From positions 4,402,001-4,466,000 of the forward strand of contig OZ281495.1 in assembly GCA_965637545.1 (NCBI GenBank): a DNA stretch of 64,000 nucleotides. The letters run 5' to 3'. The translations under genes and the position numbers were made by a program. A model generated the notes under the pieces. That model was not told where the DNA came from. It did not search any database and worked only from the letters and a program-made list of their open reading frames with translations. Shown here in pieces: positions 923 to 63,580 of the stretch. This DNA is from Phallusia mammillata. Lineage: Eukaryota. Position 1 is the stretch's first letter; each line of letters begins with the position of its first letter.

Positions 923-3524
923 CTAAGTCTCTAACTCTATGTCTGTTTTAACTGGCTCATCAGAACAGGGGCAACAGCAGCAGCAGCAGCAACAACACTT
1001 GAGGTGCTTCATGATAAAATCAATAACAGCTTTGATTCCTGCCAAACACAAATATTACAAAAATATTTTTGTTCTAAAAAATATTTTTATGCGCAAAAAT
1101 GTTTGTAATTGATTTTTATTTTCGAAAATAGTAATGATTTTTGCTTACCACTCCAAATGGCCATCAAACATTTTTTTATAGCCTCCCAAATGCATTTCCA
1201 ATTCCAGAAATGACCGGTAAAACAGCCAACAATAAATAAACCGACTATCAGTATCGCCCAGAGCCAGTCTGGTAAAGCTGTAAACGATAAAAACATTGAC
1301 AACAGCTCTATGCAAAGTTCGTTGAACTGGCACAATGTAAATTCTTACCTGAGCAGTTCTTACATGTTGACACTTTACCAGAAGTGCAATAAGAAGAGAC
1401 AACAACTATACCTTCCTTCTGACATCTCGCCACAGCAAACCCGTTACATCCGACGGGACAAGTCAAATTCACCAACTCATTGTATTGAATTGTAGCTGGA
1501 CTGTTGTCATATTTACAATCCTCTTCACAATCACTTTTACATGGTAAATATTCATTCAAGTAACAAACCACTGCAAAATAGAATCAGGGCATTAAAAAAA
1601 TCGTTTTGTCAATAAACCAAAGAATACGGAAAAACAAAGAGTGTGTACCATTTAATTATAACATGCAGAAGTTCGCTCTAGGCATGAGCTGTCCTTAATT
1701 TATTGTGAATGTTGTTGTTTTTTCCGCTAGTGAAACACATAACTGACATCATTACACAATTAACAAAAAACGAAATATTCGTTTCAAATTATACAATATG
1801 GACACAACAATCGATGCGAAAGTCGCATTTTCTCTCTGCATTATGTATGAAATGCAACCAAGGGCGATTTGTTCACTTGTGTAACGTCACCTGGTTGGCA
1901 AGGGTTCGTGACGTTCAACAACTTGTTGGCTCCACAAACAGCTGTAGAATTTCCACTGCAACCATCAGGACAAGTCATATTGATACTTTCTCCAAACCGT
2001 AAATCTGACCCGGTAAATTGGCAGCTTGTCGCACAACCACAGTCCGCTTGTTGCGGAAGAGAGCAAGTAACAGCTAAAATGAAAAACAAAAAGGTTGTTT
2101 TGCATTAAACACAACAATTTTGAACAGCAGTATGTCAGTTGACACTTTAACAATTGCTTAACGAGTTTTACAGTTTCTTGATTTGTTGCAAAGCAACGAT
2201 ATTGCTGTTAACTATGTGTATTGTACTGCTTATTAGAACAAACCTTCACAAACAATCGATTCACTCCAAGTTGCATCATTTTGGCAAGTTGCAGTAACAG
2301 GACATCCTTCATAATCATCAATACATGAGAGTGTCGCAATACAACCTAGACCGCATGGGACTTGTGTGACATCTGCTACTACTTCCTGCGAAGAGCTGCA
2401 CTCTGTTCAAAAACATAGGTTGCTGTTTCTCCCTCAGGAATCTGGCACTAATCTTTTCACAGGTCTTTGGTCCTGAGCAGTACGCACGTTGTGTTTTGTA
2501 AGTTACAACTGTTCTTGTTTAAACTTTTGCTTATTTGTGCTCATTTAGGCTTTTAAAAAAACTTACCTGAAGCGATAATTGTCACATTTGGAAGGGTAAA
2601 CCCATCAGAATCTTCTACCGCCAGAGTAGCATTGTTCATGTGCGATGAAAGAATGACGTGTAGGGTCATAACGACATCGCCCGGTAAACTTTGGACACTA
2701 AAATCAATGTTTTTGAATCACTGCAAACCCTTCATTGTTAAGTTATGAGCAAATTTTATCAGGCACGTGAGGTACAAGCATAGCCAAACCAAAATATTCA
2801 TTGCTGTGTTTACTGTTGGAATTATATATCTGGTTGATTAAATAGCGGAAATTCTTTTTTTTTGCAATGCTCGATAACGTACATCCAATTGTGCCAAATT
2901 AAATAATAAATACTTCAATGAACAATGCAATAGATAATGTTATATTAAACTAGCAATATGACGAACATCTGTAGCTAAATCAAAAGATATTGTTGAACGG
3001 TTAATTTGGTTCAAAAATAGAATAAATATACTTAACTTTAAAGATAGAAATTCATTGAATGTTGAATTGTATTGAGTTACCACTGGTAATAAAACAAGAC
3101 TGCCAAACACTTCGTACACTGGTGTCTAAAATGTAGTACGGTAAAAATTGAAGTACTCCTACGAATATTTTACATTTAGTTCTTAGACGAAATAAGTTTT
3201 GCAACCTATAACAACACACATTTGTTTTTGGGTAAATTCTATTGTTCTTAATGTGTATCTTACGTTGTTAATATACCAATAAATAGTAATAGAACCACTC
3301 GTGTAGTCGTTGGTAGTTATATACGTTTGTGTCCCGTTAATAACTGTAGTTACAGGAGAAATATCAAATGATGAAAAGCTTGATCTTGTGATGTTTATCG
3401 AACCTGTAACGCATAAAATGGTTGGTTTCTAATTGGTGCACTATAGCACGCCGTTAATACAAATAGCACAGTTTACACACTTACATACAAATGCGATGAA
3501 ACATGTTGTTAGCGAATAGTTCAT
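923..3524 (-). CDS. Gene A: small-family type I membrane protein, ~402 aa (signal peptide, Cys-free Ig-like domain, 3 CCP/sushi-like repeats, TM, poly-Cys tail)
   Basis: Nine exons with GT-AG sites and closing phases: 3485-3524, 3264-3403, 3037-3125, 2567-2697, 2244-2402, 1891-2073, 1349-1570 (alternative in-phase donor at 1379), 1149-1277, 923-1038. The N-terminus is MNYSLTTCFIAFVCSINIT. CCP1 reads CSSSQ...CGLGCIATLSC...TCQNDATWSESIVC. The TM is WLWAILIVGLFIVGCFTG. The tail ends KCCCCCCCCCPCSDEPVKTDIELET*. Confidence 0.88.
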
Positions 3525-4434
3525 TTTCGACGAAAATCGAAGTATACGGATTTCTGGTTTCTTTGAGCAAATTAATGGTTCATTAACAGCGTTTTCGAGC
3601 AGTCACGGAAAGCCTACTGCTGTATCCCAACAATCTAAAGCTTTCATTTATAACCAAAAGGTAATCTTTTTCTGAAATATATTCAAATCACAAAGCAGGA
3701 AATTTTTTAGTTTAGTATAAATAGTTGACATACACATGATCCAAACATTTGTTATGTTACATACTAGAACAGTAAAAGGTCAAATTTCAAATTTGTGCAA
3801 ACAAATGCTTCACATTTATACGACCTGAATTAATTTATACGCGTATTATCTCTAATTATTCTCTTCCTTCTCCAGCTTCAAGTTGTTTAAAATTTAGAAA
3901 CGAATTACGAGTTTTTCAAAAAAACGTTTAAAATTTCAGAATGTTTGTCTCAAAATACAATTTTAAACTGTGTATTTAGTCATGTCAGAATGTAATAGTA
4001 AAAATACAGGCAATGCGAACCACAAAACACGTTACTCGATATTTTGAATGTCACCTGGTTTACATTGCCATATTTAGTCTTGTTGCAAAACAAATACTAT
4101 TCATTTCGGTAAGAAAACCAAAAGATTCAAATCTTGCCCAAAATGTGATAGAACTTGACAGTGAGCATATTTTTCCAAAGCACCAAGTAGAAACACTAAA
4201 AAGTGTATTGCAGTGCCCTACCAACCGTTCCTCATTTTAACAAATTTGTTTAAAATGCTTCATTGAAACTCTGCTGTTGACAACTGTTCTACACCTGCTA
4301 GAATCCATCCACCTTGCACAAAATCGACCCACTTCTTTGGAACAAAAAGCTTATTGACTTTTGACAAAAAAAGGTTTTGGCGTCTTGTGCGTTACTGCGT
4401 TACGAGCGCATTGCCTTGCGCACTGGCAATCAGA
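3525..4434. promoter_or_regulatory. Putative bidirectional promoter between divergent genes A and B
   Basis: About 910 bp separate two outward-facing ATGs. A CpG-rich patch (GCGTTACGAGCGCATTGCCTTGCGCAC, ~4397-4423) lies just upstream of the B ATG. Promoter function is inferred from position only. Confidence 0.5.
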
Positions 4435-7400
4435 ATGTTGCGAATATTTGGATTTCATCTCAGTCTTATACTTTTTGCAAAATCAATTATAGTTGATGGT
4501 AAGTAAAATAAGATTTGAGGTATAGCGATAAAATAAAATATTAAATTGTTGTTTAAGGAAAAGCAACATGTGAGACGATAGACGCAGCACAGGGAAGCAT
4601 AACCTGCAAAAGTTTCAACGTGACCAATTGGGAGATGACAATCGATTATAATGTGAAGCAATTAAATCTGATTGTGAATACAACCACAATAGGTTTTGCT
4701 GTACCATCTTGGGGATGTTGTATCTTTGATGCTTGTCCATCACCATCTTTTCCAAACAATTTCAGTTTACAAGCACACGTAGCGTGTAACGACAGCTGGG
4801 TTTCTTTACTTGTCCACGAAGTACATCAAAACTTACAATTTTCCTTCTATCAAGACTGTAGTAATACCGTTGCAAAAAGTGTTGTTATTGTCCAAGGTAA
4901 ATTACATTACATGCGAGTTTAAACTAATACTTGCATTGTATAATTTTGTAAACAGAGCAAATAATAAAACAATGCATGTTTGTTGCAATAATGAAATCGT
5001 TCTATTTTTTAGATTGTGTTGGATATTGCAACTTAACTGGATGCATAAGCAGCGCAAGTTACAACAAGACGTCAAATTTCGCTTGTGAACAAAACACCAC
5101 TTTGTTTGTGGATGGAAATCCTCAAAGCAGTCTGAAATCTGACTTTCCAATGGTTTGTGATATTTCAAGCTCATGGGTTGGGCAAGGAACACCAGAATGC
5201 TGGTTTGGTAATTGATAATGTTTTTGTTATTTCTTTTGGCCTTTTGCCACTTTTTTCTACTACTGGAATATAGTGTGTTGTTTATTTTGGTAATAATGTG
5301 GTTGTCGGTCCATCATAATTGTTTTAAAAATTGTTGAATATTTCAGCTTTACTCGAAAACTTCCAACCAGTTTACAATGAATCGGACAACGTTTATACAC
5401 AATGTACCTTGAGGGGGAATTCCACCATACAGACAATATCATCAACAACTTTTTTAGACGGAAAAGAAGTGAGTGCTGCTGTACAACTACAGCGCATCTA
5501 GTGGTCAAACATAACTTCTTTTTAGGTTACAACCGATACGTTTCAAATTAATTCAACTTACAATGGAAAGTTAATTTGGTGCACCATTAAAGTTAATGGT
5601 GTCAGTCTGGAATCGAACAAACGAACACTAGTTGTTCATTGTAAGTTTGTGTTTAAAACCCAGAATTGCACATAGGCGTTTATAAAGCAATATATAAGTC
5701 GAACTTTGATCATTGCTTTAGAAAATTTTATTTCCAATTCTATTGTACTCAAGCTTACATATCACAACATCACAAAATTTTACAACAAACACTTATAACC
5801 CATCATTTCTTTTATTCGATTATACAAATGAAAAAGGCGTTCGTTTTAAGTTTGTTTACATTTTGTGTTCCCAAGTCAAACCGCAGACTGTGCTTATTCC
5901 AATATCTACGTCGGGTGATAACATTGTGAAAACAAGTGATGAGTTTCTTCTTCACTGGCCGGAAACGCTGAACATGACATGCGAGAACTCGGCTAACCCA
6001 CAAGCTACTTGTTCATGGGGGTATTTCAACCAAACACATGAAACCATCATACGAAATACTTGTAACACGAAAATCTACATAAGCAATTCTTCTAATGTTT
6101 GGTGCAACGCACTGAATCTATTGGGGGCAACAAATAGCAGTGTAAACAAGTTCTTGGTTGCTGGAAAAAGTAGGTGATAGGTAAATTGCGAGTAAATTCT
6201 TGACTGAAGTTGTGTTTGGCTTGCAGGAAGCACTTTTATCAATCTCGAACCAAACGACAATGAATTATTATTGGGCAAAACTCTTAATTTGAAATGTGGC
6301 ACTTTATTTCAAGTTGAATTAAATACCACGTTTCAATGGACTGTGCCAAATGAGCAAGGAATGAGTCTTACGCAAAGCAAACTTATAATTTCTAAAGCAA
6401 CGAAAATAGACGGTGGAAATTACACTTGTAAAACAAGCGATGCTTTTGACAGTGGAAATGCTACCGTAAACGTGGACGTTATATGTAAGGAGTAAACTTA
6501 TTACATGCACGAGTCGCGTTGATAGGTCAAAAAATACACACAAGGTGCCGAAAATACACGAAAATACACGTTTATATTGTTTACCCTACCAAAATGTATC
6601 AATATATTTGTAAATTCGTCAATACTTTCTTATGCATTTTATTTTGTGTTATGCGACTGTTACATAATATTTTTTTAATACAGTCTGCTGTTTTTTTAAC
6701 TACTATTCATCCGTGCTCTCCGTATATTGTTTTTGTGCAGGGAGTTCTTCCAATGTCACAATTAACGCAACTACAAGCGGTTTTTCAACATTTACTGAAT
6801 CACAAGTATTTCTACAACAAGATCAAAATGTGACAATCAATTGTTATCCCGATGATGCAAATCCAAAAGCAATATGTTTGATTCAAATCAATGATACCTT
6901 TTTGAATACCGATGCGGTTTCTTGTTCCAACACTATTTATTTCAATGAAACATCCATAGCCAATTGCATTGCGAGTAACAAAGTCGGAAAAACCAGCAGC
7001 AAAACTTTGGATTTTGTTGTCATATATGAAAGTATGGTGTTGATTTAGTTTGTACTTTTTACTGTCATAATTTTGAAACAAATCTACATGCACAGGAAAT
7101 TCCCACATTGAAGCACTCAAACAGCCGAATGTCCCAATACGAAATGGAAACGAAATTTCGTTGAGCTGCATTATTCCATATTATCAAGAGCTGAACACGA
7201 GTTTTGTATGGACCATACCCAGCTCACGAAATGTTGATCTTAACAGTCCAACTTTGTTGTTATCTGATCTGACAAGATTTGATTTGGGAGATTACACTTG
7301 TCATACACAGGACCAGTTTGGAAGTGACAATAATACGTTATTTCTGAACGTGACATGTAAGGAGTTTATTTCTAAAACTGTCATCCTGCAGTATTTTTCG

Positions 7401-9654
7401 GTCATACATTTTTCTATTTTTAGATCCACCGATAGAGACAGACGGTTATACAACATGCAACTGGACTGAAGTAAAAACGGAAAAATGTTTTTTAACATTT
7501 TCTTCAAATCCTTTAGCCACAACTTACACGTTATCCAATAAAGGGTGGCAAGGAAAAATCGGTAACGATCCAAATGACACCACTGAACAAACTTTTTATC
7601 TTCTTTTGGGGGTAAATATTTTACTAATATTAATTCTGTTTGGTTGAAGTAATGTTTAGTTGCCATTGTTATCTCTACTATACTTTATGACAGTGTATGT
7701 TTATTTTGAACAGACTGAAAGCACTGATAGCAGCGACGAAACGATTAAATTGACAATCATAAGCTCTAGCTTTCCTGATGAAAATCTTGAAGTTACTTTT
7801 GTGATATCAAACAATCCTGGTCAAAACTCAAGTTCAAACAAAACAGCGATCATTGTTGGAATTGTGGTTGGGGTCATGGTACTTATTGCCATACTTGCCG
7901 TTTCATTGGTATTCGTTCGAAGAAGTCGTTCTGTCCAGAAACGAGGTGAGCTAGCTTTGTTTTGTAAACAGGATGCAGTCGGTGAAACAAATATATATTT
8001 TTTGTTAGAACCTTCAGTCACAAGTGATGAAAGTAGTCGAAGTGAAAACAATTATATGGAAGGTATATACACAAACAATTTTACCGCATCATTTTTTCTG
8101 TTGAAAAGTTGTTTCATTTATGATCGATACTTACCTAAAGATAATAAAACCAAAAAGTATTAATAAGATAATAAAACCAAAAGTAAACCAAAAGTATTAC
8201 GCGTGCGCTTTAAACACATTTCAATTACTTTCAGACGAACCACCCCAAGTTCGACATGACGAATATGCGACAGTTGACTTGAACAAGAAGAAACCTAAAA
8301 GTAACTTAAATAAATAATTTAATATGTTATTAAATGCCAATGTGTATTTTTCAGATAAAAATTCCACCAAGGAAGAAAGGATAAACCCGCTGTATGGCGA
8401 CCTCAGTGATCCCGATGCGATCCAAGATGCTTTTTCCGGGCCAACTGAATCAGGTATTACGAGGTGGTCGAAAAGCTTAAGTTGTAATTATCATGGGTAA
8501 ACAATCCTTATCATGCCTTTGGCCACTTGGAAACGTGTTGTTTTTAGCTCTTTGTTGCAAGCAACTTCCTAGTAATCATCCAACTTTAATTTAGTCCTTA
8601 AAGCTTTCAGCCTTGTACCACGCTGAGGGTTAGAATAATTTTGTATAGAAATGGAACAGTACAGATAATCTATATAACAATATTAACCATTTAGCACGAC
8701 TGTTTATGTTACGTTTGCAGAGAAAGAAGATAAAGTCAATCCGATTTATTCCCCAATGCAAACAAGTGCTGTAATCGGAGAAGTTTACGCACAAGTTGAC
8801 ATAACAAAGAAAACGAAAAGTAAGATAGGTAACTTTGATGTGAAAATGCAACAACGTTAATGTGACATATTTCGTAGGCGAAAAGGAGGAAAAACAAAAT
8901 CCGTTATACGGTTCCTACCCGGTTCCGTTAAACTTGCATTCGGGCCAAACAGAGTCAAGTGAGGTTACTGATGATCCGTCCTATCAAACTTCTAAATTGA
9001 ATGGCGACACTTATGCACAAGTTAATAAGAATCAACTGACAAATGGTACGTGTGACAGAGAATGGATTTACGCAACGACTAAATAGGTCGATCCTTAAAC
9101 GTATATGCAAGGTCACCTCCCTTCGCGCGCATGAAAACATTTCTATCATTTTAAATGCACCCGGTAGTCACTCTTTAGCAAACGATGATTAAAAATCTGT
9201 TTGGGGTAATTTGCTGATCAATTAGATATGGTAACTATGATCAAAATAACTTTTATTGTTGTAGATAATTCGGCACCTGTTTCTAAAAGCAAGCCACCGA
9301 AGCCTCCTATCAAAAAGAAACCTGCTTTTATTCCTAAAAGTAAGTTTATGTTTTCAACATGCAGTGTGTGTCGATACCCAAAAACTATGACAAAATTATT
9401 TACAACAGAGTGACTGCATTGCCAATCTTCATGAAAAAATAACGTAAGTAAAGCAGTATTGTTTTGAAAATGTAGCACCTACTGTATTTTCGCATGTAAG
9501 TGGAAAAAACAATACGATAAAAAAAAGTATATGGATATCAATGTGTGTTATACGCATCTGGCTTTGTGCATTCTCTGTACATTTGCTTTAAACGATAATA
9601 TATAATTCTACAGAAATATCGCACCTAAGCGCTGTGGTTGCAAAAGTGATGTAA
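4435..9654 (+). CDS. Gene B: large-family Ig-superfamily receptor, ~986 aa (signal peptide, divergent N-domain, CCP, 5 Ig, juxtamembrane domain, TM, Tyr-motif tail)
   Basis: Eighteen phase-consistent exons: 4435-4498, 4558-4896, 5013-5207, 5347-5468, 5526-5640, 5876-6169, 6227-6484, 6741-7031, 7096-7356, 7424-7611, 7714-7945, 8009-8062, 8235-8300, 8355-8453, 8721-8819, 8878-9045, 9265-9339, 9614-9654 (alternative last exon 9725-9774). Ig signatures include LKC...W...DGGNYTC and LSC...W...DLGDYTC. The TM is AIIVGIVVGVMVLIAILAVSLVFV. The tail has NPLY, NPIY, NPLY, YATV, YAQV x2 and PPKPP. Confidence 0.9.
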
Positions 9655-15200: not shown

Positions 15201-15245
15201 TCAAAACATCGATAAAAAAACATAATATTTGATCCAAACTGATTT

Positions 15246-15299: not shown

Positions 15300-15354
15300 T
15301 ATTGAACAAATCAGCAAAAGCCATTGGTCACTTGGTGGAATACTGGGCAAAAAT

Positions 15355-51060: not shown

Positions 51061-51232
51061 ACCTAAACTATTGAAAGCAAACCATCTTGGAAGTGACAGA
51101 TTTGTTACTAAAAAAATTAACCTACGAATGTCTTACATTCGTTGCTTCTAAGCTTTTAGGCTTGCGCCATACTAACAGAATTTTTTCGCTGGCTAAAACA
51201 AATCATAACAAATATGTTTTGAGGGCAGAAAT

Positions 51233-52422: not shown

Positions 52423-53339
52423 CAGTGGACCGGGTTTCTGTTGAACCCCAGGGGTTCGCCAACGCCGAATGAGGGGGTTGACGAGGGTCTTTTTGAAGTA
52501 CAATACAAATACCTGGACTTTAGGATCTACAATCGCTCAAAACGGTAATTTGTATTTGTCAAATATCAAACACTGGATGGTTAGACTTAGGCAGGGGTGT
52601 TTTAAACTGTTCTAAACAGTTTCTGTGGCACTAAAAACAGTACTACCTGCCTAATAACCGTATGTATCAGACTTTTTGTACGCCTATTGTGTGTCAACAA
52701 TGCGAACAAAACAGGTACCAAAAGCATCACAATATAGATTATGACACCATAAACACTTAAGACTGATCTCCTCCCTGTGCAGCTCAATGTGTGCACAGAG
52801 CTACAATCTAATCTGGGCTTTTTAAGCGCTATTAGATGGTAAATGCATGAAATAATATAAGTATTTTAAAACAAAAATAAGCAAGTAAATGGCGGCCTTT
52901 CGTGAAATAAGAATCAGCGATGTGGCCGTCCTAGCAAAATGGTTGTACACCCTTGCACTAAGGTTTTATTTATTTTGTTTGACGTAAAAAAGAGCATTAA
53001 TTGTTCGTAAGCAGAAAAACAACGAAACTTTGTTGGCAGCAAAAACTTATTACTTCATCTTTTTCATGTTTGTGTACAGATGCTAAAAATACAATGCTTC
53101 ATTTTGGTAAAAACTAAAAATTGCCGGAATTAAAGCGATCATGAAACAAGTTGTTTGTATTATCATGTCAGAATTTACCGAATTGACAAACTTTAACTTT
53201 TGCCACTTCGTTTGAACAAAAACTAATTGTAGCCCACCAAATAAAATATATTAAAATCCTAGGATAGAACTTTGGTGTTCGACCAAAGGCTGAAGAATAT
53301 CGTAGGGGTTCGGCCGGTATAAAAAGGTAAAAACCACTG
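52423..53339. mobile_element. hAT MITE containing a nested hAT MITE (52592-52955)
   Basis: Outer element CAGTGG...AACCACTG with TSD ACATAGAG/ACATAGAA. Inner element CAGGGGTGT...ACACCCTTG with TSD GACTTAGG/CACTAAGG. Confidence 0.75.
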
Positions 53340-53413
53340 ACATAGAACGTAAAAATCCGCTTAAACTGCTGGTTACAGGCGTAATAATAAGATTCGTTAT
53401 ACTAGGTTTAGAG

Positions 53414-54006
53414 CAGTGGTTCCCAACCTATCTACACTGTGGGATCTGTAAAAATGTAAGAAAATTCCACGGACCGGCAAGAAAAGATCGTAGTGAATGC
53501 AAAAGATATTTGTAAGTTTTTGTTCACCAAAGTTGTCGTTGCGCAACGTAACGCAAGCTTTAGTCATAGCCCATGTATTTAAGACGAAAAATTACGACCA
53601 AACGGAAATCAACTCAACTCAAACAACAAAACGCTAATCCATTTACATACAAAATCAATGCTGGTGGGATGTTTGCTGTTGTTTCGCTGCCAGTATGAAT
53701 CTCAAAATCTCAAAAGCAAAGAATAACTTTGTTTTCCAAAAATATGTTGACTGCTAGGCACAGTTTATGACAAAACAGTCATAAACGTCAAAAAAGCTTT
53801 ATAAACAATTTTACGGGTATCCACGGTGGAGAGCTATCCCAGTTTAACGCCAAGCGTAAAATGAGTTTTGTAGGTACCAACAACTTTGTAATAGGCCTAC
53901 TTATAATTCTATTTTTAAAAAAGTAGCTTGGCAGAAAGTAAGATAATTTGCGGACCGGCAAAATGTTTACCCGGGCCGGGACCGGTCCGCGGGTTGGGAA
54001 CCACTG
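53414..54006. mobile_element. hAT MITE
   Basis: TIR CAGTGGTTCCCAACC / GGTTGGGAACCACTG; perfect TSD GTTTAGAG. Confidence 0.92.
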
Positions 54007-54374
54007 GTTTAGAGCACTCCCACAAAAGCAAATGTTGAGCACGAAAATTTTGTAGTTAAAAACTTACCCACAGTGGCTTGCGTGTCATTATCCATGTTTT
54101 TTATTCCTCCATAGACTGGGTTAACTCGTTCCACTCTTTCAGAAGTTTGCCCTTTAACGTGTAAAATCAGTTTGCATATTTACTATGTGTGTGGGTTCAA
54201 CTTGGAAACACAAAAATTGCGTTTGTTACTGCGATTGTACATGTGAAAATTATATATGTTAATGCGCACGTTTTTTTGAATAGAGGTTATTTTATAGAAT
54301 AGGGGTGGGGTGAATTTCAATTTAGTGAGCAGATAAAGTAACAACAGGCAACAAAAGTTACAATATACTTAGAA

Positions 54375-54856
54375 CAGTGGTTCCCAACCTGGGGTTCGCG
54401 GACCCCCAAGGGGTCCGTGAGACGGTTTCAGGGGGTCCGTGGAGGCAAACATTTGTAGTAGCATTAACAACGGTACAATATTTTTAAGTTCCCAAACCGT
54501 TTTTGCAATCCTGTATATAAGTGCAAACTGTTAATCAAACCCTTGGATCAGGAAAACTTGTGATTGTTACCTCCATTGTGACATCACAACACACATTAAC
54601 AATAGAATTCTTTGTGCTTTGTTTTTAAGCATTGTACACCAGAAAATTTTATCTCTTTTAGTGCATTGACTGCTACAGTACAGAACTTTATTGAGATTAA
54701 CGGACTGTGAAGGTTGATTAAAATTCTGCCCCCAAAAACGAAAGTATAATAACGTATAATGCAAGAAGCGAAAAAAGATTAAATTACGTTGGGGGTCCGC
54801 GGACCGATAAAATTTATAAAAGGGGTCCGTGACTACTAAAAGGTTGGGAACCACTG
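54375..54856. mobile_element. hAT MITE
   Basis: TIR CAGTGGTTCCCAACCT / AGGTTGGGAACCACTG; perfect TSD ACTTAGAA. Confidence 0.92.
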
Positions 54857-57800
54857 ACTTAGAACCAAGCAAAGATTTTTGCATGCATAGTATTAAACGT
54901 AATTTGGAACACATCGACGTGCAGTTAAAACCGATAGCATGCCTTTAAAATTTACAAATAGATTATGTTGTTTTGTATAAGCAGAATCTTTCATTCCAAA
55001 TCTAGCGCTAAAATTTGTCTGTGAGAGTGACGAAAACACAATTAGAAACCTTTATTCGAACAATCTACTGTGGCATATGCATCGGGTATATCGTCTGGGA
55101 CACTTGAATTTCCATAAAGTGGGTTATCTCGTACCTCTCTTTCATTAGAAGAACCTGCACGATATCTGACAGTTTTGAATGCAGTTAGTTGAAACGAAAA
55201 AGTTGCAGTGTAAAATGCGTCACCCTCAGCGAAGCTAACGTTAACAATTGTGTTGGTTATTTTCATCACCTTTTTGTTTCGTTTGCTTTCTTCTCTTTAC
55301 AACACAAACAGCAATCAAAATAATAACAACAGCGAGCACAGCCACAATTACAACGACTACAATAACGCCAGTTTGGCTATTTCCACCGAAGTCACCATCT
55401 AAACAAACAAGTTCTGAACTTGAAAAAAATTAACAACCTTTTGAACAGCTTACTTGTTATAGTAAATGTAACTTCCAATGGATTTGGAAACTGCTCTAAT
55501 AATGTTGAATAGACTTCTAACTTGTATGTCGCTTGGTTGTTGGTGACCTGTAAGATCGTTAGGTGCTGTAAAAATTTTTAAACGATATTCCGGTACTTAA
55601 TATAGTTAATGGGTAACCAGTTGATTGAATGGAAGCTAAGTTTTTTTTTTTTTGGATTGATCCTGCTTTATTAAGTACGTTTGCTTGATGCAGCTAAAAT
55701 AAGTGCTGACGCAGATCCTTGTTTAAAATTGAGTCGAAAATATTCACCTCAGTTGATAAAATAAACCTTTGAATACATGCGTCATCAACAAATATTTGAA
55801 CAAACGTGCAATTGTCGCAGAAAATCGTGTTGCCTGGTCAGATGCAAAAAAATATTTTGAACGTATACGTTTATGCATTCAAAAATAGCTAAATACCATT
55901 TTGGGTTAACGTGTAATTTTCAGTAACTGGATTAGAAATGAAGTCCGCAAAGCACCGTCCATTTAATACATCAATCCATTCGCAAGTTGTCTTTCCTCCA
56001 ATAAATTCAGGTCCATCTAAACGCAAGGAAGGGACTAGATTCAAGATTATAACTTCAGTACACAAAACGAAAATATTTTCTCACAAGTTACGTTAACAAA
56101 GAATGTTTTTGTTGTACTGCCGAACGTATCGTTTGTATGACAAGTGTAATTTCCCGAATAAGATTGGGAAAGGTTATATAAAATTAATTCGGAATCATTA
56201 AAATTGGTGTCATCTAATGGAGTTCTCCACGTATACGTTGCTCCAATGTCAGCGGAATATGGAATTGTGCAGTTAAGAGATAAACATTTTCCCTTTTGAG
56301 TTTCCACGTACTGTACATCATCAGATTGACCTGATGAAAGTACTTTATTAAGTTCTAATGTCGTAACGGTGCTTGAATAAATTTGATATTTTTCAAACAA
56401 TGCTCGTTACCAGACCGATCAGCTACATCGATGAACAGCGTTGAACTAGTTTGGCTTCCAGCCTCGTTTTGAGCACTGCAGTTTACCAAAGCGGAATTGT
56501 TGAATGCCTGATTGAAAGCACACGATGTTTGATGGACAACACTGTTGTTGATATAAAACTGGCACGAAGCTTCAGGGTTGGCATCGGTCAAACAATACAA
56601 CGTCACATCTTGATTGGCGTTTACCAACACACCATTGCTTGTGTTAACAGCGTTACTTGAATTTCCAACAATTGCGTTTATATTGGCATGATTCCCTACA
56701 TGGTAAAAATCAACAGCATATTTAATAAAATGACGGTCTATTCTTAGAATCGTACTACAAACTTTAATTATGTTAATAAATGTTTGTTTTTAAACAAAAT
56801 GATGACGCTGTTGTGTTCTGTTGCAAACACTTGAGTCACTGCAAAACGATGTGCATATTTTTTTCTACATGTTAATTATGGATTGTAGGCTATGTAAGCA
56901 GATGGGGTTAAGTTAGGAGTGCTCTGTAAAAAAAGTGGCTAATAGCCCACAGACAAAAGGTACTTACACCAAACGTTAATACAAACGCAATCAGTGCTAT
57001 TGTCAAAAACATCTGTCGTTGAGCAATTGTAGCAACCAGCGTCGTTTGCTGATATAGATCGAATGAACAAAGATTGTTGCGCTTGGTCTAGTTGTCTGTC
57101 AGTATTTGGAACCGTCCAATGAAACGTTGTATTTAATATTGTTTGGAACTCAATGTTGCAACGTAAAGTGATGTCACAGTTTTCAAGGAAAGAAATTGAG
57201 GCATTTTGTTTGTTATTTGGCGATATGAGTGCATTTCCTGCCAAAAGACAAACACTTTGAAAGTAAACAAAAAGTGGCATAAGTTCTAACTTAACTGACT
57301 TTTTCCAGTAACGTTGAAGTAGACAGTGGTACTACTGGCTGTTCCGTACGCATTAAATGCCGAACATCCTATCTCACAGTCAGTGGTAATGTTTATTTTT
57401 TGTGTGCATTTTTCATTGCGATAAACCCCATCTGCTGTTGAAGTTGTAATAATCCAAGAACAATTTGCTGTTGGATTCGCACTATTTTTGCATGTCATGT
57501 TAATCAAAGTTGGCCAGTGAAGCAAGTATCCATGGGAAGTTTTAATCGTATCGGCATGTGAACTAACTGTGATTTTCGCATTGGTCGGTTTATCTGAAAA
57601 CGCAAGTTTTTTTTTTCAAATCCATCTGCCAATCATTTGTTGCCAGTTAAGTGTAAGTGTTTCTTAATGTTTAATTTTCTTACTTACAGTAAACCGTAAG
57701 CATAGACGTGTTTGATGTTAACGTGGCATCTGATACATTCATTAAACACCAAATATCCTGGTCGTTGTGAGCAGAATTAACTTCAAAGTTGCTGCTTACA

Positions 57801-58461
57801 ATCTGTTCAAACATAAAACATGGAGTTAGTCACAAATGAGAAACTAAAATAAGCTGCAGACAATGCATACAGTTTCGACCTATAAGGGTTCATGAGTGCA
57901 GCTGGTGAGGAGAGATCTGCCGTATTGGCTAGTGTAACCATTCAACGGCACTCTAGTTTGTTGGGAGCATCAGGGTAAAAACTAAGATACCACTTAAAAC
58001 TACGTTCATTTTTTTCCGTTGATTTAGTCTTGCGCTTAACGTGTTTAAACCGACAACGTGCTATACACCACATTTTAAGAGGGAAATAGAAACTTTTGGG
58101 CAACTTTAGGTGAAAAAACAAACTTTTAGTTCGTTAATAACCTACGTTGTTGTCCAAGTAATAGTTGACATCGGTTTCAAATTCGCTTGAATTTCCTTTT
58201 AACAAGCATCGTAAATCAGTTATGTTGGATTCAACATAAAAGGGTTGAACATCTAAAACAACTAAAATATAAAGCAAATTGAAACTTTGTAATCAGTTAA
58301 AATTCAATTTGTTTGAAGTCGTGTGAAAAGGGCCAGTAATTACAATACTTTATTGCATGATTAATCCTGTTTAATAGCAACTGCAGTTGTTAAATCATGT
58401 ATAAAAAACGCAACCGCTTTGGTGGTGCTTGCCTACTTTAATTTAATTGTATCTCCTATGT

Positions 58462-58970
58462 CAGGGCTACTCAATTAGTTTTGTGAAAGGTCCAGATAGA
58501 AAAGGTAAAAATACTAAAGGTCCGGACACTTTCGTCAGTAATGCAACATGTATCAGCCAACTTTGGTTATTGGCAATGGGGAAAATCGTGATACAAAATT
58601 AACACTTTTCTTCAAGCCAAATGTTTCTGTCAGTAAAACAAAAAGCTTAAATTGGGCACTGACCATAAACTAAGTTTTAGCACGACGACAAACAAAATAC
58701 AGTTTATCTAGTTTTGCAGAATTACTTCCTAAGGTAATAATTCAAAATTCAGTTATTGCGTCATAGATACAATTGTGCGCAAACAATCGCCGTTTCGGTA
58801 ATAGTGTATTGGAGTTTGGAAACACTTCAGGCTCCTCGCAGTACTTTGAGAATCGGACTCGAGTTAACTGTCGCTACATAGCAACGATCATGAAATTAAA
58901 AGACCGTCGAGGTCCAAAAACGCCCCAAAGGTCCGGATTTGGCCCGCGGGCCGCCATTTGAGTAGCCCTG
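58462..58970. mobile_element. hAT MITE between the truncated 5' ends of F and G
   Basis: Perfect 13-bp TIR CAGGGCTACTCAA / TTGAGTAGCCCTG; perfect TSD TCCTATGT. Confidence 0.92.
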
Positions 58971-59071
58971 TCCTATGTGTTGACATTATCTATCTTCTGG
59001 GGTTCGAAATGATTATAGTCGGTTATTTTTTTGTCAACAACTTGGGCTATAAATTGCGTTATTTTTTTTAG

Positions 59072-59753
59072 TAACTTGTGAAGCTGTGGAAAATGGTAAA
59101 TGTGAAATTTCGAATTGCGCATTTGCTGCTAATGAAACAGTGGCATTTGAAGAAACAGTGTCAATGATGTGCTCGGATGGTTCCTCCGCAACAGCCACTT
59201 GTGGATCAGACGGAACATTTACTTGTAATAAAGGTGTGTATCGGAATCCTTTTGCTTGTCGTTTACAGAAAGAATCAAAAACGACTTATTGACTTAATCG
59301 TAACACGCGTGATAGAGAAAAAAATGTGTGCATACCGTTTTACCTGGTGCCACGCTAAAGACAAAAAAAAAATTTTAGCACACGCGTCATCCAACGTTTG
59401 TGGTTGTGCATTATTTTTCGTAACAAGCGCCAGTTTATTGTTAATACAAAGTTGTTTGCTTCTCGAAGTTTACTGGAGCAAAATAAAGTTAACAACACGT
59501 TTTTTTTATACGACATCTATTTCGGGGTTGAAGTTTAGTGGTGTTCTGTATTTTTTAGTAGGTTAAGTCTCCTAACAAAATGATCGGTTTTGTGTGACCG
59601 CATAACAGCGGTTTGAAATGTTTTTTTTGTTTTGTTTTAGAAAACGAAAATGATTCATCTTTGTCTGCAGGGGCAATAGCTGGAATAGTAATAGGATCTG
59701 TAGCAGGATTATGTGCAATTGCGGGGTTGTTATATTGGTTCTTTAAAAAATGA
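59072..59753 (+). pseudogene. Gene G: 5'-truncated small-family remnant (one CCP-like exon + TM exon)
   Basis: Exon 59072-59233 (VTCEAVENGKCEISNCAF...SMMCSDGSSATATCGSDGTFTCNK) is homologous to the second CCP of A and has the same 162-nt length as D exon 6. Exon 59641-59753 reads SLSAGAIAGIVIGSVAGLCAIAGLLYWFFKK*. No signal or Ig exons were found. Confidence 0.75.
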
Positions 59754-60706
59754 TCACTAAAAAAAATCACCATTGTGTATACCTATTTTGCAAAAAAAAA
59801 GTTGATAACAAATATATAAATCCCACGTTTGTAGAAGATAACAGTTGAAAATGTGTGTAATTTCCCAACATTTCTTTATGTAAATTCATTTCCATTTTAA
59901 TTATTATTTTTTTTATTTTCATTATTTAAATTATTTTCAGTATTCCTGTTTCAGCAAAATTTCGAAATCAAATAAAATGTTTATCTTTTAAAAACCAAAA
60001 GCTTTCATTGTGTTTGCGACATTAAATTAACAAAATGTGCATTAGTTTAATGAGAAATAAAACCTTTAAAGTAATTGGGATGTACCAAAAAGTTTGATAA
60101 CAAGTCTTTACAAGACCACTTAACAGACTCATGTGTAGTGATTAAAGTGTAAAAGCTTATTTTTAAAACAAGCCTTACTGTGATCGTACAATGACGGTTT
60201 TTATCTTACCAGAATAAAATTTGTTTAATTATGTCTAATTCTCTTTTGTTAATTAATTGACAACAGTTTGTAGATATCAATCGATATTAGTTAGACACTA
60301 GCCTAACAAATTCTCTACCTTGTTAAATCATCATTAAAACGATCAAAAAGATGTCGAGAAAACAAGTAGCACTTCGTAAATTACATTCTAAAGAGGGGAA
60401 ATTTACAAAATATTTTGTAAAGGGCGTGTTCTTGTGATCGCAAACCGAAATTAATAACGGTAATAAAAAGCCTGATAAGCCCACAAACACATCTACTGAT
60501 TTGTCGTTTAGTGTAAGTTTTATCGATGAGTTAGTAAAACAAAAATGACGATTGGTTGTTTTATGCGCCCCGACACATGGCTCGTTGCAAACAGCGATAA
60601 AAATCGTATCATTGCGGTTATTTTTTACAACTGGGGTGCGTTTGAAAGCTTATGCATATTGGCTCCATTTTATTCGAAAAATTTGATATGTCAGTATTTA
60701 AAAATT

Positions 60707-63580
60707 ACTTTGAAACTGAAATGTTTTTACATTAATGCATATCCGGTCGGAACTAATACGGTCTATTATATAGGCGGGGATGTTATTGGAAATGTCTCTA
60801 AAGTAAGTGCAATTGTTGTGTAGACTTTTCGCCTTTAGGATGCAACGGCCTTTTCACTAGGACGGGCAATATAATAAGATGAAACTTCGAATACTAAAGA
60901 GCTTACCCCACATAAATCTGTGGCCAATATTTAGCAATATTGCAAGATTAAAAAATATAATGACGCATGTTATGAATAAAGATTCTGGTTTATGGTGGTC
61001 AGAAGATGTAATTTTTTTAAAAGTATGGTTGTTTATAAACATAGTGTTGTTATGGAAGTTTTTCCTTCGTTTTTGTGTCCAACAGACTGTCTGTACACGG
61101 CAACTTAGACGAACGATTATATTTCCAAAAGTTCTCTTGTGAAGATTAGTTATGTCAACATACCATTGTTTACAACTCTTTAATCTATTTCTGCGTGAGT
61201 TTGCTTCTTTTGGTCCTGTGCTTGTTTTTGTAGCTACTCATGCACTAAACAACTGACTTCTGAAACGTTTAAGTCATTCGTTTTTGTCCAATAGTCTGGT
61301 GTAATATCACATCTTTTTATTGACACGTTTGTGCAAACAAATCATCAGTTTAAGAAATGTGGTCGACAATTTTCAGGCAAGCCAATTACATTTCATTCCA
61401 ACACGTAAGGACAACAGTCATAATGTTTTTTGCCAAGCTGTTACCACCTACACGGAATATAATAAAGCACTAGGACGTTCATCAGTCACTTTGATCAGCG
61501 TGAAATGTAAGTTACACCCAGACATCGTTTAATTTTTAGGTTTTATCAGCAGTGTTGCCATATCCCTTAATAATCTCCGTTGAAAACATAATTGTTCCTC
61601 TATCAATTCGAGAAACCAAATGATAAGTTACCAAACATGAAGAAAAATCTTCAACAGAGACCATTGCCGACAAACAGTAAAAAACGTTAACAGTAAGCAG
61701 AAGACAAGTATTGTGTGTGCATAGTTCTTTCAGGCTACTTTCATCATTTAATACTCATATTAGGAATTGTACACGAGGGTCTTCATTAGGCACATTGCAT
61801 GACACGGTACAAGCCATAGGTTGCCCAAGCAGTAACAATTTGTATTAATATCGTTTTGTTTATTAACTTTTCTCTTATGAAATATTTTCGCAGATCCACC
61901 AGTTCAAGGCGAAATTAATATAAAAACTAATTCATCAGTTAAAAATGAATTTGGGGTTTTTCTTGATGGCGAACAAAAAGCGACACTAAACTATTCAAGA
62001 GAAGCAAATCCACCACCTAGTTGTGAATTTCAAATTGGCAATCTTATCCAAAGTATAAGTTCTTGCGTATTATCACACAATTTTACAATAACAGCATCCG
62101 TTTCATGTAATGCAAGTAACCTGGTTGGTTACAGTGTTTCACAACTTAATGTTACAGTTGTTACAGAAAGTAAGTTGAACTGATAATAGATATTTTAATT
62201 GCTAAAGTTCCAACATCCATTTCAGGAATAAGTTACTCAGTCGGATGCAAACAAGACACCTAAAAATGCTGGAGAAAATGTTACCTTAAGTTGCTCAGTT
62301 TATTATTCTATTGAACTCGACACAAACTTTTATTGGCAAATTCCTGATCAAACGCGTGTCGTAGATAAACTGAACGATGTTTTAAATTTGCCTAATTTGA
62401 CCAGGCTAGATTTGGGAAACTACTTCTGCAAAACAAGTGATGCTTTTCGAGTTTACATGAGCGTATATTTTTTAAATGTCACATGTGAGTTAACTTCAAT
62501 TAAATTGATTATCTAAGCATAAAAATGTAAAAATGTATTTCGAAACGCTTTACAGATTCTCCACAGGAAATCGACAGTCATACAAACTGCAAATTAGATG
62601 AAGTTGTCAATAGTGATTGTTTTGTTACGTTTTCATCCAATCCCCCTTCGTTTCAATATATGTTGACAAAAAATGGTTAGTCAAGTTTCGTGTACTTTTC
62701 TTCTGTTGATTGTAATTTATGTTCCTTCTATCTTTCAGATTCCATCGTGTACTGTCCTAATTGTTATTTTACAAATGATAGCAACGATAACACAAAACAA
62801 ACATTTGTTTTCGTAATGGAAGTAGGTTGTTGTGTTATTATCATGTAACTTTTAGTAAGCAGGAATACTTTTAGATTTCTGCTGAAAGAGAAACGTATGA
62901 TTTAAGGATTAAATCACCAATGGAAGGTTTTAATGATCTAGTTGTTGAGTTTGTGATATCCAACCAAGGCAACAAATCTGGTGGAAATCGAAATAAAAAA
63001 GTTATAATCGCTGCAAGTGTTGTGGGGAGCATCGTTATAAACGCTATTGTTGCATTTTCTACATATTCCATGGCGATTAAAAAGAACCAAAAAAAACAAA
63101 GGTAAACACGAATAACACTGTCGAAAAACCTAAACATTCACCTTACTAACCCAACTTTTCATAGCTACTAAATCAAACCAAAATCACATTTATGAGAATA
63201 CATTTGACATGGAAAATGTTTCCTCGGATCAAGTTTACGAGGGTACGTAGATTTTTTGCAATTCTGTACTAAATTTGTCAACGTTAGGTGTTTCAACAAG
63301 AAGAATATACACTTATGTTGTAAATAATTTTGAATCTAGAAGTTATTGTATTTCATGTTTTTTCAGTACCAACAGATTAAATACATCACAATTATGAAAA
63401 TGTGGATCTGCAAAAAGGTGAAGCTCAATGTAAGTTTAATCATGTCCTACAACAAAACATAATCTTATTTGTAAATGATTTGTTTTTAGCTACGGAGATC
63501 GAACCAAAAACAACGATGTCTCAAAAACCCCAACCAGCAGTTCTTATGTAAACCAAGCACATCAAACAGAAGCTGCTTGA
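60707..63580 (+). pseudogene. Gene H: 5'-truncated, disabled close paralog of E that retains the TM exon and a YxN-motif tail
   Basis: Homology to E starts mid-exon at ~60707. Exon remnants: to 60802, 61377-61506, 61894-62169 (Ig Cys to Tyr, LNYSR vs LNCSR), 62226-62484 (5-nt deletion, TAA at 62261), 62556-62675, 62739-62821, 62875-63101 (TM, phase shifted in an A run), 63165-63242, 63367-63429 (TAA at 63378), 63490-63580. Confidence 0.85.

What the first reader, a model, noticed from the sequence alone, without database searches (positions are those of the whole stretch)
923..63580. Head-to-head paired receptor array: Tyr-free Ig/CCP 'sensor' genes coupled to Tyr-motif Ig 'co-receptor' genes (candidate allorecognition/innate-recognition locus)
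Seen: three times a small Ig-like+CCP+TM gene with no cytoplasmic tyrosine sits divergently next to a large CCP+multi-Ig+TM gene with a tyrosine-motif tail (A/B, C/D, F/G). A/B is inverted relative to the other two pairs. There are two further large-family copies (E, H). Paralogs keep exon phases and sizes but are very divergent in protein, and every state is present: intact, soluble, truncated, frameshifted. Knowledge (recalled, not verifiable here): Botryllus schlosseri has sushi/CCP-containing fester-family receptors and Ig-type Fester co-receptors with tyrosine signalling motifs, encoded in pairs. Vertebrate KIR/LILR/CEACAM clusters evolve by the same birth-and-death pattern. Inference: this is a co-expressed two-chain receptor system, possibly an undescribed counterpart of that locus in another lineage. 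The ORF track shows none of it as whole genes.
Basis: partly seen in the sequence, partly recalled or inferred. Interest (0 to 1): 0.92.

Follow-up and report, generated by a model that had tools for sequence, protein, structure and literature searches.

The report
Paired Ig/CCP receptor gene cluster, ascidian
This stretch of a sea-squirt-like genome holds a cluster of surface-receptor genes in which small, signal-less genes sit back-to-back with large signalling genes, the layout recently described for the Botryllus self/non-self (fester/FcoR) receptors, here apparently in a different ascidian lineage and with a differently built small partner.

Summary
The window carries five paralogous large genes (B, C, E, F, H). 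Their plan is signal peptide, variable N-domain, Sushi/CCP, about five Ig domains, a membrane-proximal Cys domain, one TM and a tyrosine-motif tail. It also carries three small genes (A, D, G) with CCP-like modules, one TM and a Tyr-free tail. A/B, C/D and F/G are head-to-head. The start codons are 910 bp apart in A/B and 553 bp apart in C/D.

A, B, C and D give complete open models. E lacks TM and tail. F, G and H lack their 5' exons.

A profile of the small-gene modules matches only CCP proteins, and their fold model matches CCP structures. The large-gene tails carry NPxY and [D/E]xYAxV, often as NPxY-x11-12-YAxV. The same module occurs in a Clavelina homologue. The closest database relatives are uncharacterised Phallusia and Clavelina proteins.

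The layout and domain order match the Botryllus FF/FcoR pairs (PNAS 2025). There are differences: the small partner has one TM, not three, and no canonical ITIM or hemITAM is present. No RNA evidence was found, and no small partner was seen at the sampled Clavelina or metagenome loci.

First readers noted similar pairs 60-107 kb further along this genome; I did not check those notes.

Verdict: a real locus and a new variant of a known kind. Functional pairing is inferred, not shown.

The parts
923..3524 (-). Gene A, small chain, 8 exons, about 385 aa. Short signal peptide, N-domain in 2 exons, three CCP-like modules (exons 2402-2244, 2073-1891, 1570-1349, all phase 1-1), TM exon 1277-1149, and a last exon 1038-923 with a run of eight Cys. 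No cytoplasmic Tyr.
   Evidence: ORF map. Model. CCP profile and fold. Single hydrophobic segment.
3525..4434 (.). A/B intergenic spacer, 910 bp between the divergent start codons. Candidate bidirectional promoter (inferred).
   Evidence: Models. No sequence similarity to the C/D spacer.
4435..9413 (+). Gene B, large chain, about 16 exons. Signal peptide, N-domain exon 4558-4896, CCP exon 5013-5207, split Ig (5347-5468 and 5526-5640), four Ig exons, membrane-proximal Cys domain 7424-7611, TM exon 7714-7945. Tail exons from 8235 carry NPxY three times and [D/E]xYAxV three times. Terminal Pro-rich exon 9265-9413.
19765..25096 (-). Gene C, large chain, same plan as B, about 990 aa. CCP exon 24492-24301, TM exon 21509-21303. 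Tail exons 20942-20203 carry NPxY four times and YAxV three times, spaced 31-33 aa. Terminal Pro-rich exon 19859-19765.
25097..25649 (.). C/D intergenic spacer, 553 bp between the divergent start codons.
   Evidence: Models. Comparison with the A/B spacer.
25650..28988 (+). Gene D, small chain, about 408 aa by the model. Signal peptide, N-domain piece, CCP-like exons 26603-26780, 26839-27000 and 28206-28370, an interposed beta-rich domain in 3 exons, TM exon 28834-28988. Tail without Tyr.
   Evidence: Exon junctions in the 5' third are uncertain.
40408..43485 (+). Gene E, large family. N-domain ORF, CCP exon 41172-41363 and Ig exons, ending after the stalk. No counterpart of H's TM and tail exons within 3.5 kb downstream.
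49579..58252 (-). Gene F, large family, B-type. Starts with the split-Ig exon; no signal-peptide, N-domain or CCP exon was found. TM exon 55413-55270. Tail modules are scattered over 49579-55296 around inserted repeats. One module has Gln where the others have Tyr (DTQATV in place of DTYATV).
58253..59071 (.). F/G spacer, 819 bp. Too short to hold the missing 5' exons of both genes, which fits a deletion.
59072..59750 (+). Gene G, small-family remnant: one CCP-like exon (59072-59233) and one TM exon (from 59641).
   Evidence: (Smith-Waterman z 6.7 against A's CCP2).
60595..63551 (+). Gene H, large family, E-type. No N-domain or CCP exon. The Ig-a domain has Tyr where E has its canonical Cys. 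A TM ORF lies at 62875-63102 but no frame-consistent path runs through it. Tail pieces carry YEN twice.

Best explanation
This is a birth-and-death cluster of two receptor gene families that duplicate together as head-to-head pairs, in an ascidian genome.

The large chain is a type I glycoprotein: variable N-domain, Sushi, about five Ig domains, a membrane-proximal Cys domain and one TM. Its modular tail is built from symmetric phase-1 exons. Each module carries NPxY and/or [D/E]xYAxV, often as NPxY-x11-12-YAxV. The tail ends in a conserved Pro-rich exon (PPKPPxKxKPAFIPKS).

The small chain is a type I protein with an N-domain, one to three Trp-poor CCP modules, one TM and a short Tyr-free tail.

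Shown here: gene order, orientation, domain content, motifs, paralogy, and conservation of the large family and its tail module in other ascidians.

Inferred: each pair is transcribed from its 0.5-0.9 kb shared spacer. The two chains assemble at the cell surface, with both N-domains forming the binding site. The large chain then signals when its tyrosines are phosphorylated, with NPxY recruiting PTB adaptors and pYAxV recruiting SH2 proteins of the Syk or SHP type. This is the model proposed for Botryllus fester-family/FcoR pairs. I read the locus as a counterpart of that system, probably homologous, in a non-botryllid lineage, with a differently built small partner.
For: - Five large paralogues and three small ones lie in three divergent pairs.
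- Ig hits in the large genes. Sushi in the large genes. CCP identity of the small-gene modules from their own profile and from a fold model.
- A, D and G are homologous to each other (Smith-Waterman z 5-7.6).
- Complete open models with a signal peptide and one TM for A-D.
- Tyr-free small tails against NPxY/[D/E]xYAxV large tails.
- NPxY-to-YAxV distance is 12-13 residues in the window and 13 residues five times in Clavelina P0160. YAxV spacing is 31-33 residues in C, against 29-33 for FcoR core-2.
- B and C share a terminal Pro-rich exon although they are only about 35% identical elsewhere.
- E/H dN/dS is 0.34.
- Family members exist in Clavelina and Phallusia.
- The published FF/FcoR architecture and head-to-head pairing.
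- Another individual's DNA holds only about 30% of the C/D words, and on A/B it gives only patchy exon matches, mostly under 90% identical.
Against: - No transcript evidence: contigs of three RNA runs laid nothing on 923-6900, and no RNA run held its words.
- The two intergenic spacers share no sequence.
- The small chain has one TM, whereas FF has three.
- No canonical ITIM, ITSM, hemITAM or ITAM. No charged residue inside any TM that would point to chain pairing.
- E and H have no partner. F/G is a remnant.
- No small partner within 10 kb upstream of four Clavelina homologues or on a metagenome tunicate contig.
- The N-domain fold is unresolved.
- No direct sequence comparison with Botryllus FF/FcoR was possible.
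- The three pairs may be one ancestral pair copied, so adjacency alone is weak evidence of coupling.
Confidence: 0.55

Rival explanations
1. Passive neighbours. Two unrelated receptor families (an Ig/Sushi signalling receptor and a CCP membrane protein) happened to lie head-to-head once, and segmental duplication copied the block. The chains work independently. The large one could be a CD22/Siglec- or Draper-like adhesion or phagocytic receptor. The small one could be a complement-regulator-like or vCRL1-like protein.
For: - Adjacency can be inherited from one event.
- E and H stand alone.
- No partner at the sampled Clavelina or metagenome loci.
- No conserved spacer sequence. No TM charges.
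- The Ig domains' best non-tunicate hits are teleost CD22-like proteins.
- Ciona has a polymorphic Sushi receptor, vCRL1, that acts alone in blood formation.
Against: - The arrangement has survived divergence so deep that A, D and G are barely alignable, and B, C and F are 25-45% identical.
- The same unusual pairing of a Tyr-free Sushi chain with an Ig-Sushi-Ig Tyr-motif chain is co-expressed in Botryllus.
- First-reader notes report further pairs 60-107 kb away (unchecked).
Confidence: 0.3
2. A decaying locus. Most or all copies are unexpressed pseudogenes left by a past expansion. The open models for A-D would then be recent relics.
For: - E lacks TM and tail. F, G and H lack their 5' exons. 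H has lost a canonical Cys and its TM exon does not fit the frame. F's tail is broken up by repeats and one module has lost its Tyr.
- No RNA was found.
- Transposon remains and satellites fill the gaps.
Against: - A (8 exons), B (about 16), C (about 16) and D (9) each give an uninterrupted frame-consistent path with plausible splice sites.
- E/H dN/dS is 0.34, and 0.16 in the membrane-proximal domain.
- A conserved terminal exon is shared by B and C.
- A Phallusia relative (P0014) is held in NCBI and UniRef as a named protein.
- The RNA libraries sampled were few and of unknown tissue.
Confidence: 0.1

Closest known systems
[quoted passage not shown]
   Same: - Head-to-head pairs of a small Sushi-bearing chain without Tyr motifs and a large chain built as signal peptide, N-domain, Sushi, Ig domains, one TM and a long Tyr-motif tail.
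- Clusters evolving by birth and death, with solitary FcoR-type copies.
- Very low identity between paralogues with conserved architecture.
- Acidic-x-YAxV type motifs spaced about 30 residues apart.
- The N-domain is one exon in one partner and split in the other.
- The second Ig resembles CD22 C2 domains.
   Different: - The small chain here has one TM (FF has three) and up to three Trp-poor CCP modules (FF has one Sushi).
- The large chain is about 950-990 aa with about five Ig domains plus an extra membrane-proximal domain (FcoR is 520-610 aa with three Ig).
- NPxY modules and a Pro-rich terminal exon are not described for FcoR.
- No canonical ITIM or hemITAM here.
- No HECT-ligase or fuhc-ligand gene in the window.
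- Co-expression and polymorphism are not shown here. Sequence homology was not tested.
Uncharacterised ascidian proteins: Clavelina lepadiformis LOC143446606, LOC143446907, LOC143445755, LOC143447449 and others (about 1.8 Mb of OX392440.1), and Phallusia mammillata 'Mucin-5AC-like' CAB3264085.1
   Same: - True sequence relatives of the large chain.
- Collinear matches over the Ig-a/Ig-b/membrane-proximal unit: 54% between F and the Phallusia protein.
- Sushi domain 41-55% identical.
- LOC143446606 carries six copies of the NPxY-x12-YAxV module. Other Clavelina members carry YENx tails, as H does.
   Different: None of them is described functionally. At the four Clavelina loci sampled, the genes lie in tandem or next to housekeeping genes, and no small CCP partner was detected. 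The Clavelina N-domains look V-set-like in sequence, whereas the window's are unalignable.
Vertebrate leukocyte receptor clusters (KIR, LILR, CEACAM, CD22/Siglec, teleost NILT/LITR)
   Same: Multi-Ig type I receptors with Tyr-motif tails in rapidly turning-over clusters. These include intact, secreted and truncated copies. The Ig domains' best non-tunicate matches are teleost CD22-like proteins.
   Different: They have no Sushi domain and no obligate head-to-head partner gene. Activating forms pair with ITAM adaptors through TM charges, which are absent here. Canonical ITIMs are absent here.
Ciona vCRL1 (variable complement receptor-like 1)
   Same: A polymorphic Sushi-domain transmembrane protein of a solitary ascidian. 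A possible analogue of the small chain.
   Different: Known to me only from reviews. No sequence was compared, and no paired Ig partner is reported.
Draper / CED-1 / MEGF10 engulfment receptors (my own knowledge, not tested here)
   Same: Tails combine NPxY (PTB adaptor) with a nearby Yxx[L/I/V] that recruits a Syk-type kinase.
   Different: Their ectodomains are EGF/EMI repeats, not Ig/Sushi. They are single genes, not paired clusters.

Membership tests
Botryllus FcoR (fester co-receptor) | Type I protein with a signal peptide and a single TM | tested here: met
   The B and C models have an N-terminal hydrophobic leader and one strong 19-mer (KD 3.25 and 2.88).
Botryllus FcoR (fester co-receptor) | N-terminal V-type Ig-like domain | tested here: inconclusive
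   No Pfam hit for the N-domain exons of B, C or E. The single-sequence AF2 model of C's N-domain has pLDDT 36, predicted all-beta. Atlas features point weakly to a beta-sandwich. The N-termini of Clavelina relatives look V-like by eye only.
Botryllus FcoR (fester co-receptor) | Sushi as the second ectodomain module | tested here: met
   C: Pfam Sushi E=0.0012, 19.7 bits against a cut-off of 20.7. B, C and E align with four invariant Cys and the Trp. A mixed profile of seven small-gene and four large-family modules hits complement receptors at 1e-30. The exon follows the N-domain exon directly in B, C and E.
Botryllus FcoR (fester co-receptor) | Two further C2-type Ig domains before the TM | tested here: not met
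   The Ig domains are present but number about five: one split domain plus alternating a/b types. An extra Cys-containing membrane-proximal domain follows. The proteins are about 950-990 aa, against 520-610 aa for FcoR.
Botryllus FcoR (fester co-receptor) | Tail with ITIM, hemITAM and/or core Tyr motifs (core-1 YxxI/L/V; core-2 [A/D]VYxxV in pairs 29-33 residues apart) | tested here: met
   Core-type motifs are present: DEYATV, EVYAQV, DTYAQV, ETYAEV, EAYAVV, GAYAVV. Spacing is 31 and 33 residues in C. Canonical ITIM, ITSM, hemITAM and ITAM are all absent.
Botryllus FcoR (fester co-receptor) | Encoded head-to-head with a fester-family gene | tested here: met
   Met for B (with A) and C (with D), and as a remnant for F (with G). 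E and H stand alone, as some FcoR genes do.
Botryllus FcoR (fester co-receptor) | Detectable sequence or profile homology to Botryllus FcoR proteins | not testable with these tools
   No Botryllus FcoR sequence was reachable by reference. The papers hold no supplementary text, and none of the 30 named hits was from Botryllus.
Botryllus fester family (FF) | N-terminal Ig-like (V-type) domain | not testable with these tools
   The N-domains of A and D are split over 2-3 exons, so no unspliced reference exists to fold. Pfam gives nothing for the first exon alone.
Botryllus fester family (FF) | Sushi domain in the ectodomain | tested here: met
   Seven CCP-like modules (A three, D three, G one). 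Profile search, fold search and Atlas all point to Sushi. FF has a single Sushi domain.
Botryllus fester family (FF) | Three transmembrane segments encoded by three exons | tested here: not met
   The A and D models each have one hydrophobic 19-mer. The segment after A's TM is amphipathic and charged.
Botryllus fester family (FF) | Co-expression with the adjacent FcoR, and polymorphism or gene-content variation of pairs | tested here: inconclusive
   No RNA contig of X8, X14 or X16 lies on 923-6900, and no RNA run holds its words. DNA of another individual (X3, X4) holds about 30% of the C/D words and gives only patchy matches on A/B, mostly under 90% identical. There is no genome-wide baseline for comparison.
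CCP / Sushi module (PF00084), small-gene modules | Four-Cys framework, hydrophobic core positions and the conserved Trp before Cys4 | tested here: met
   Three of the four framework Cys are invariant and the fourth is conserved in at least 90% of rows. The core F/Y-x...-C and A-x-C positions align with the canonical large-gene CCPs. The Trp is kept in only 1 of 7 modules, and the loop between Cys2 and Cys3 is shortened. Pfam alone is sub-threshold (E 0.035-0.12, or no hit).
Paired activating/inhibitory immunoreceptors of the KIR/LILR type | Charged TM residue pairing with an ITAM adaptor, or a canonical ITIM in the tail | tested here: not met
   The TM cores of B, C, F, A and D hold no charged residue. 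There is no ITIM or ITAM.

The most novel reading that the evidence does not exclude
The two-chain fester/FcoR receptor system is not a botryllid invention. It would descend from a paired Sushi-chain / Ig-Sushi-Ig signalling-chain locus already present in the common ancestor of phlebobranch, aplousobranch and stolidobranch ascidians, with a conserved NPxY-x12-YAxV signalling module. This window would be its counterpart in a non-botryllid, possibly solitary, species, where it may serve blood-cell or gamete self/non-self recognition.
Probability: 0.35. Interest if true: 0.8.

Novelty: new variant of a known kind. Interest (0 to 1): 0.62.

Why it matters
The Botryllus papers state that allorecognition receptors appear abruptly, with no obvious homologues outside the family-level clade. 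This locus has the same gene-pair layout and the same large-chain domain order. Its nearest database relatives are Phallusia and Clavelina proteins. A sequence-conserved large-chain family, with a conserved tail module, spans at least the window species, Phallusia and Clavelina.

If the link to FF/FcoR holds, the origin of the botryllid histocompatibility receptors becomes a tractable comparative question. One could ask what the ancestral pair did, when the small chain gained or lost TM segments, and how ITIM and hemITAM motifs arose from NPxY/YAxV modules. The NPxY-x12-YAxV module would also become a defined target for finding the tunicate signalling partners.

Tried and rejected
- **RNA support.** The second run search (kind rna) found no RNA holder. 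Laying contigs of three RNA runs on 923-6900 at 85% likeness gave nothing. The tissues are unknown, so this is no proof of silence.
- **Window's own annotated proteins.** An exhaustive HMMER search with C's two-Ig ORF gave no hit above 44% identity. The species or locus is therefore not annotated in the library.
- **Small partners in other species.** I used tblastn with the small-gene exons, a Cys-pattern scan, and HMMs built from alignments A2 and A1. These were run on four Clavelina loci, three loci from a metagenome tunicate contig and three further metagenome loci. Only large-gene CCP exons turned up.
- **Shared promoter elements.** Local alignment of the A/B and C/D spacers, in both orientations, scored no better than shuffles.
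- **N-domain fold.** The single-sequence AF2 model of C's N-domain was unusable (pLDDT 36). The Atlas hit to GH32 C-terminal beta-sandwiches is below the recognition level and I treat it as a lead only.
- **Small N-domains against large N-domains.** No significant similarity.
- **Botryllus sequences from supplements.** None are held.
- **Rejected: G+H as one gene.** G's module belongs to the small family (z 6.7 against A) and is followed by a TM exon.
- **Rejected: 5' exons of F or H elsewhere in the window.** tblastn with the N-terminal 200 residues of B, C and Phallusia P0014 found no further copy.
- **Spliced proteins.** They could not be sent to the database, fold or family tools because they have no reference. 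All such searches were made exon by exon.

Full report
**What the window is**

The window is 35% G+C, has no N runs and has short exon-like ORFs. This is the look of an animal genome.

I translated every stop-to-stop piece and compared all pieces with each other. Five copies of one multi-exon family emerged:
- B, + strand, about 4.4-9.4 kb
- C, - strand, 19.8-25.1 kb
- E, + strand, 40.4-43.5 kb
- F, - strand, 49.6-58.3 kb
- H, + strand, 60.6-63.6 kb

Identities are 25-45% between most copies and 64-81% between E and H. Pfam assigns the repeated exons to Ig families (Ig_3, ig, Ig_2, I-set).

**Gene models**

I built the models with my own dynamic programme over GT/AG sites and ORF pieces, correcting by hand where paralogues or database relatives showed a missed exon.

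B and C give complete, frame-consistent paths. The domain order is:
1. signal peptide
2. a 113-114-residue N-domain in one exon
3. a Sushi/CCP exon of 192-195 nt
4. an Ig domain split over two exons
5. four Ig exons of two alternating types
6. a membrane-proximal domain with two Cys
7. a stalk and TM exon
8. a tail made of short phase-1 exons

I had missed B's CCP exon (5013-5207). It came to light only because a Phallusia protein matched it at 50% identity.

B and C also share a terminal exon encoding PPKPPxKxKPAFIPKS, although they are about 35% identical elsewhere.

**The small genes**

On the opposite strand, directly upstream of B, C and F, lie A, D and G.

- A is an eight-exon model of about 385 residues. 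It has a leader, an N-domain in two exons, three Cys-rich modules in symmetric phase-1 exons, one TM exon, and a last exon with a run of eight Cys.
- D (about 408 residues) has three such modules, an extra beta-rich domain and one TM.
- G is only one module plus a TM exon.
- A, D and G are related to each other. Smith-Waterman z-scores are 5-7.6 for the modules, 5.1 for the first half of the N-domain and 3.5 for the TM.
- Neither A nor D has a cytoplasmic tyrosine, and each has a single hydrophobic segment.

**Are the modules CCP?**

- Pfam alone is weak: Sushi E 0.035-0.12 or no hit.
- A profile of the seven small-gene modules alone matches almost only complement-control proteins in the PDB: CR2 1e-13, CR1-like 2e-8, factor H module 16 at 0.014.
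- An AF2 model of A's second module (pLDDT 72) has CCP modules in 49 of its 50 best Foldseek hits, with TM 0.5-0.67 and weak E-values. The alignment behind that model included canonical large-gene CCPs, so it is not fully independent.
- The Atlas feature search also returns Sushi.
- The modules keep the four-Cys frame, but six of the seven have lost the Trp and they have a short Cys2-Cys3 loop.
- The large-gene Sushi is canonical and is the best-conserved ectodomain part. It is 41-53% identical to Clavelina proteins, and the B type is 55% identical to Phallusia.

**State of the copies**

- E has no counterpart of H's TM and tail exons within 3.5 kb downstream.
- H and F have no N-domain or CCP exon anywhere in the window.
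- Only 819 bp separate the first recognisable exons of F and G. A deletion of both 5' ends is therefore plausible.
- H has a Tyr where E has a canonical Ig Cys. Its TM ORF does not fit a consistent frame.
- F's tail is spread over 5.7 kb around repeats, and one module has lost its Tyr.
- E against H gives dN/dS 0.34, and 0.16 in the membrane-proximal domain. Both copies were therefore constrained for most of their divergence.

**Tails**

B, C and F carry three or four NPxY motifs and two or three [D/E]xYAxV motifs (three YAxV in all in each). Five of these pairs form a bipartite unit, NPxY-x11-12-YAxV. H carries YEN twice. No canonical ITIM, ITSM, hemITAM or ITAM is present.

**Relatives**

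The exhaustive profile search found only 214 proteins at E <= 0.001 among 1.84 billion, and none was above 44% identical.

The named collinear hits are uncharacterised proteins of Clavelina lepadiformis, all from one roughly 1.8 Mb stretch of OX392440.1. A Phallusia mammillata protein labelled 'Mucin-5AC-like' is the closest of all by tblastn. The rest are teleost CD22-like proteins that match single Ig domains.

Clavelina LOC143446606 has six NPxY-x12-YAxV modules with the same EKEE(K/R)INP(L/I)Y lead-in. Other Clavelina members have YENx tails, as H does.

In a quick tree of the last Ig-a/Ig-b/membrane-proximal unit, the window genes and the Phallusia protein form one clade (SH-aLRT 99) and the Clavelina genes form another. 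F and the Phallusia protein are 54% identical.

I infer that the genome is an ascidian nearer to Phallusia than to Clavelina. Its G+C of 35% also fits phlebobranch values better than the 41% tabulated for the botryllids. The species itself is hidden from me.

**Is the pairing conserved elsewhere?**

I found no small partner within 10 kb upstream of four Clavelina homologues. I found none either on a 40 kb tunicate contig from a metagenome or on two shorter ones. I looked by annotation, tblastn, a Cys-pattern scan and HMMs. This is limited sampling with insensitive methods for such fast-evolving genes. It gives no support for conserved pairing.

**Expression and polymorphism**

- No RNA run holds the A/B words, and contigs of three RNA runs laid nothing on 923-6900.
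- A DNA run from another individual under the same species label holds about 30% of the C/D words.
- On A/B that run gives only patchy matches, mostly under 90% identical and mostly over exons.
- This fits strong haplotype or gene-content variation.

**Comparison with what is known**

Three papers describe the Botryllus fester family and fester co-receptors.

- FF: Ig-like domain, Sushi, three TM, short tail.
- FcoR: signal peptide, Ig, Sushi, two Ig, one TM, tail with ITIM, hemITAM or 'core' motifs. Core-2 is [A/D]VYxxV in pairs 29-33 residues apart.
- The two families are encoded head-to-head and are co-expressed, and haplotypes differ by whole pairs.
- The N-domain is a single exon in one partner and split in the other.
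- Homologues are reported only in Botrylloides diegensis.

The window matches on:
- the layout
- the large-chain domain order
- the Tyr-free Sushi small chain
- the motif type and spacing
- the single-exon against split N-domain
- the birth-and-death pattern

It differs in:
- the TM number of the small chain
- the number of CCP and Ig modules
- the NPxY modules and the Pro-rich end
- the lack of ITIM and hemITAM

I therefore do not file A, D and G as FF members, because a defining feature was tested and not met. I treat B, C, E, F and H as FcoR-like rather than as proven FcoR.

**Verdict**

The most likely reading (0.55) is a paired two-chain receptor cluster working like FF/FcoR. The main rival is passive co-duplication of two independent families (0.3).

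First-reader notes on windows 60-107 kb further along the same sequence report more such pairs. I did not check them.

Noticed in passing
window 9265-9413 (+) and 19765-19859 (-): B and C share a terminal exon encoding PPKPP(I/L)K(K/A)KPAFIPKS, a Pro-rich and basic C-terminus that looks like an SH3-ligand motif. It can be joined in phase 1 from several upstream tail exons, so the tail composition may vary by alternative splicing.
   Followed up: partly
window 926-1038 (-): The last exon of small gene A encodes a run of eight consecutive Cys (nine with the CPC that follows) just inside the membrane, a possible multi-palmitoylation site. D has no counterpart.
   Followed up: no
window 34303-34995 (+): A 230-residue ORF with a GIY-YIG nuclease domain (Pfam E 3e-5), as in Penelope-like retroelements. 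Inverted related pieces lie at 33800-33940 and 35024-35371.
   Followed up: no
window 12476-15222: A degenerate satellite. TRF reports a 192-bp unit, 3.7 copies at 12766-13480. Six-frame self-matches extend the array over about 2.7 kb between the A/B and C/D pairs.
   Followed up: partly
window 31896-32227: A tandem repeat of 75 bp, 4.5 copies, 78% matches.
   Followed up: no
window 15737-16056, 17281-17567, 36415-36635; also 33200-33475 and 51206-51451: Dispersed repeat copies, 41-67% identical when translated. One family sits inside the broken tail region of gene F.
   Followed up: no
window 5013-5207 (+) and Phallusia P0014 residues 127-190: B's Sushi domain is a distinct subtype (CNLTGCISS, short first half). 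It is 55% identical to the Phallusia protein but only about 25% identical to the C/E/Clavelina subtype. Two Sushi subtypes therefore coexist in the window.
   Followed up: partly
L001 (Clavelina OX392440.1, 25.196-25.241 Mb), protein P0160: A Clavelina gene spanning 24.7 kb has a 395-residue tail with six NPxY-x12-YAxV modules. Each module is followed by a poly-Lys run, and the tail then has two KKKKKPPPP repeats.
   Followed up: partly
window 3515-3524 (-) and 25087-25096 (-): The modelled products of A (small) and C (large) both start with MNYS. This may be chance.
   Followed up: no
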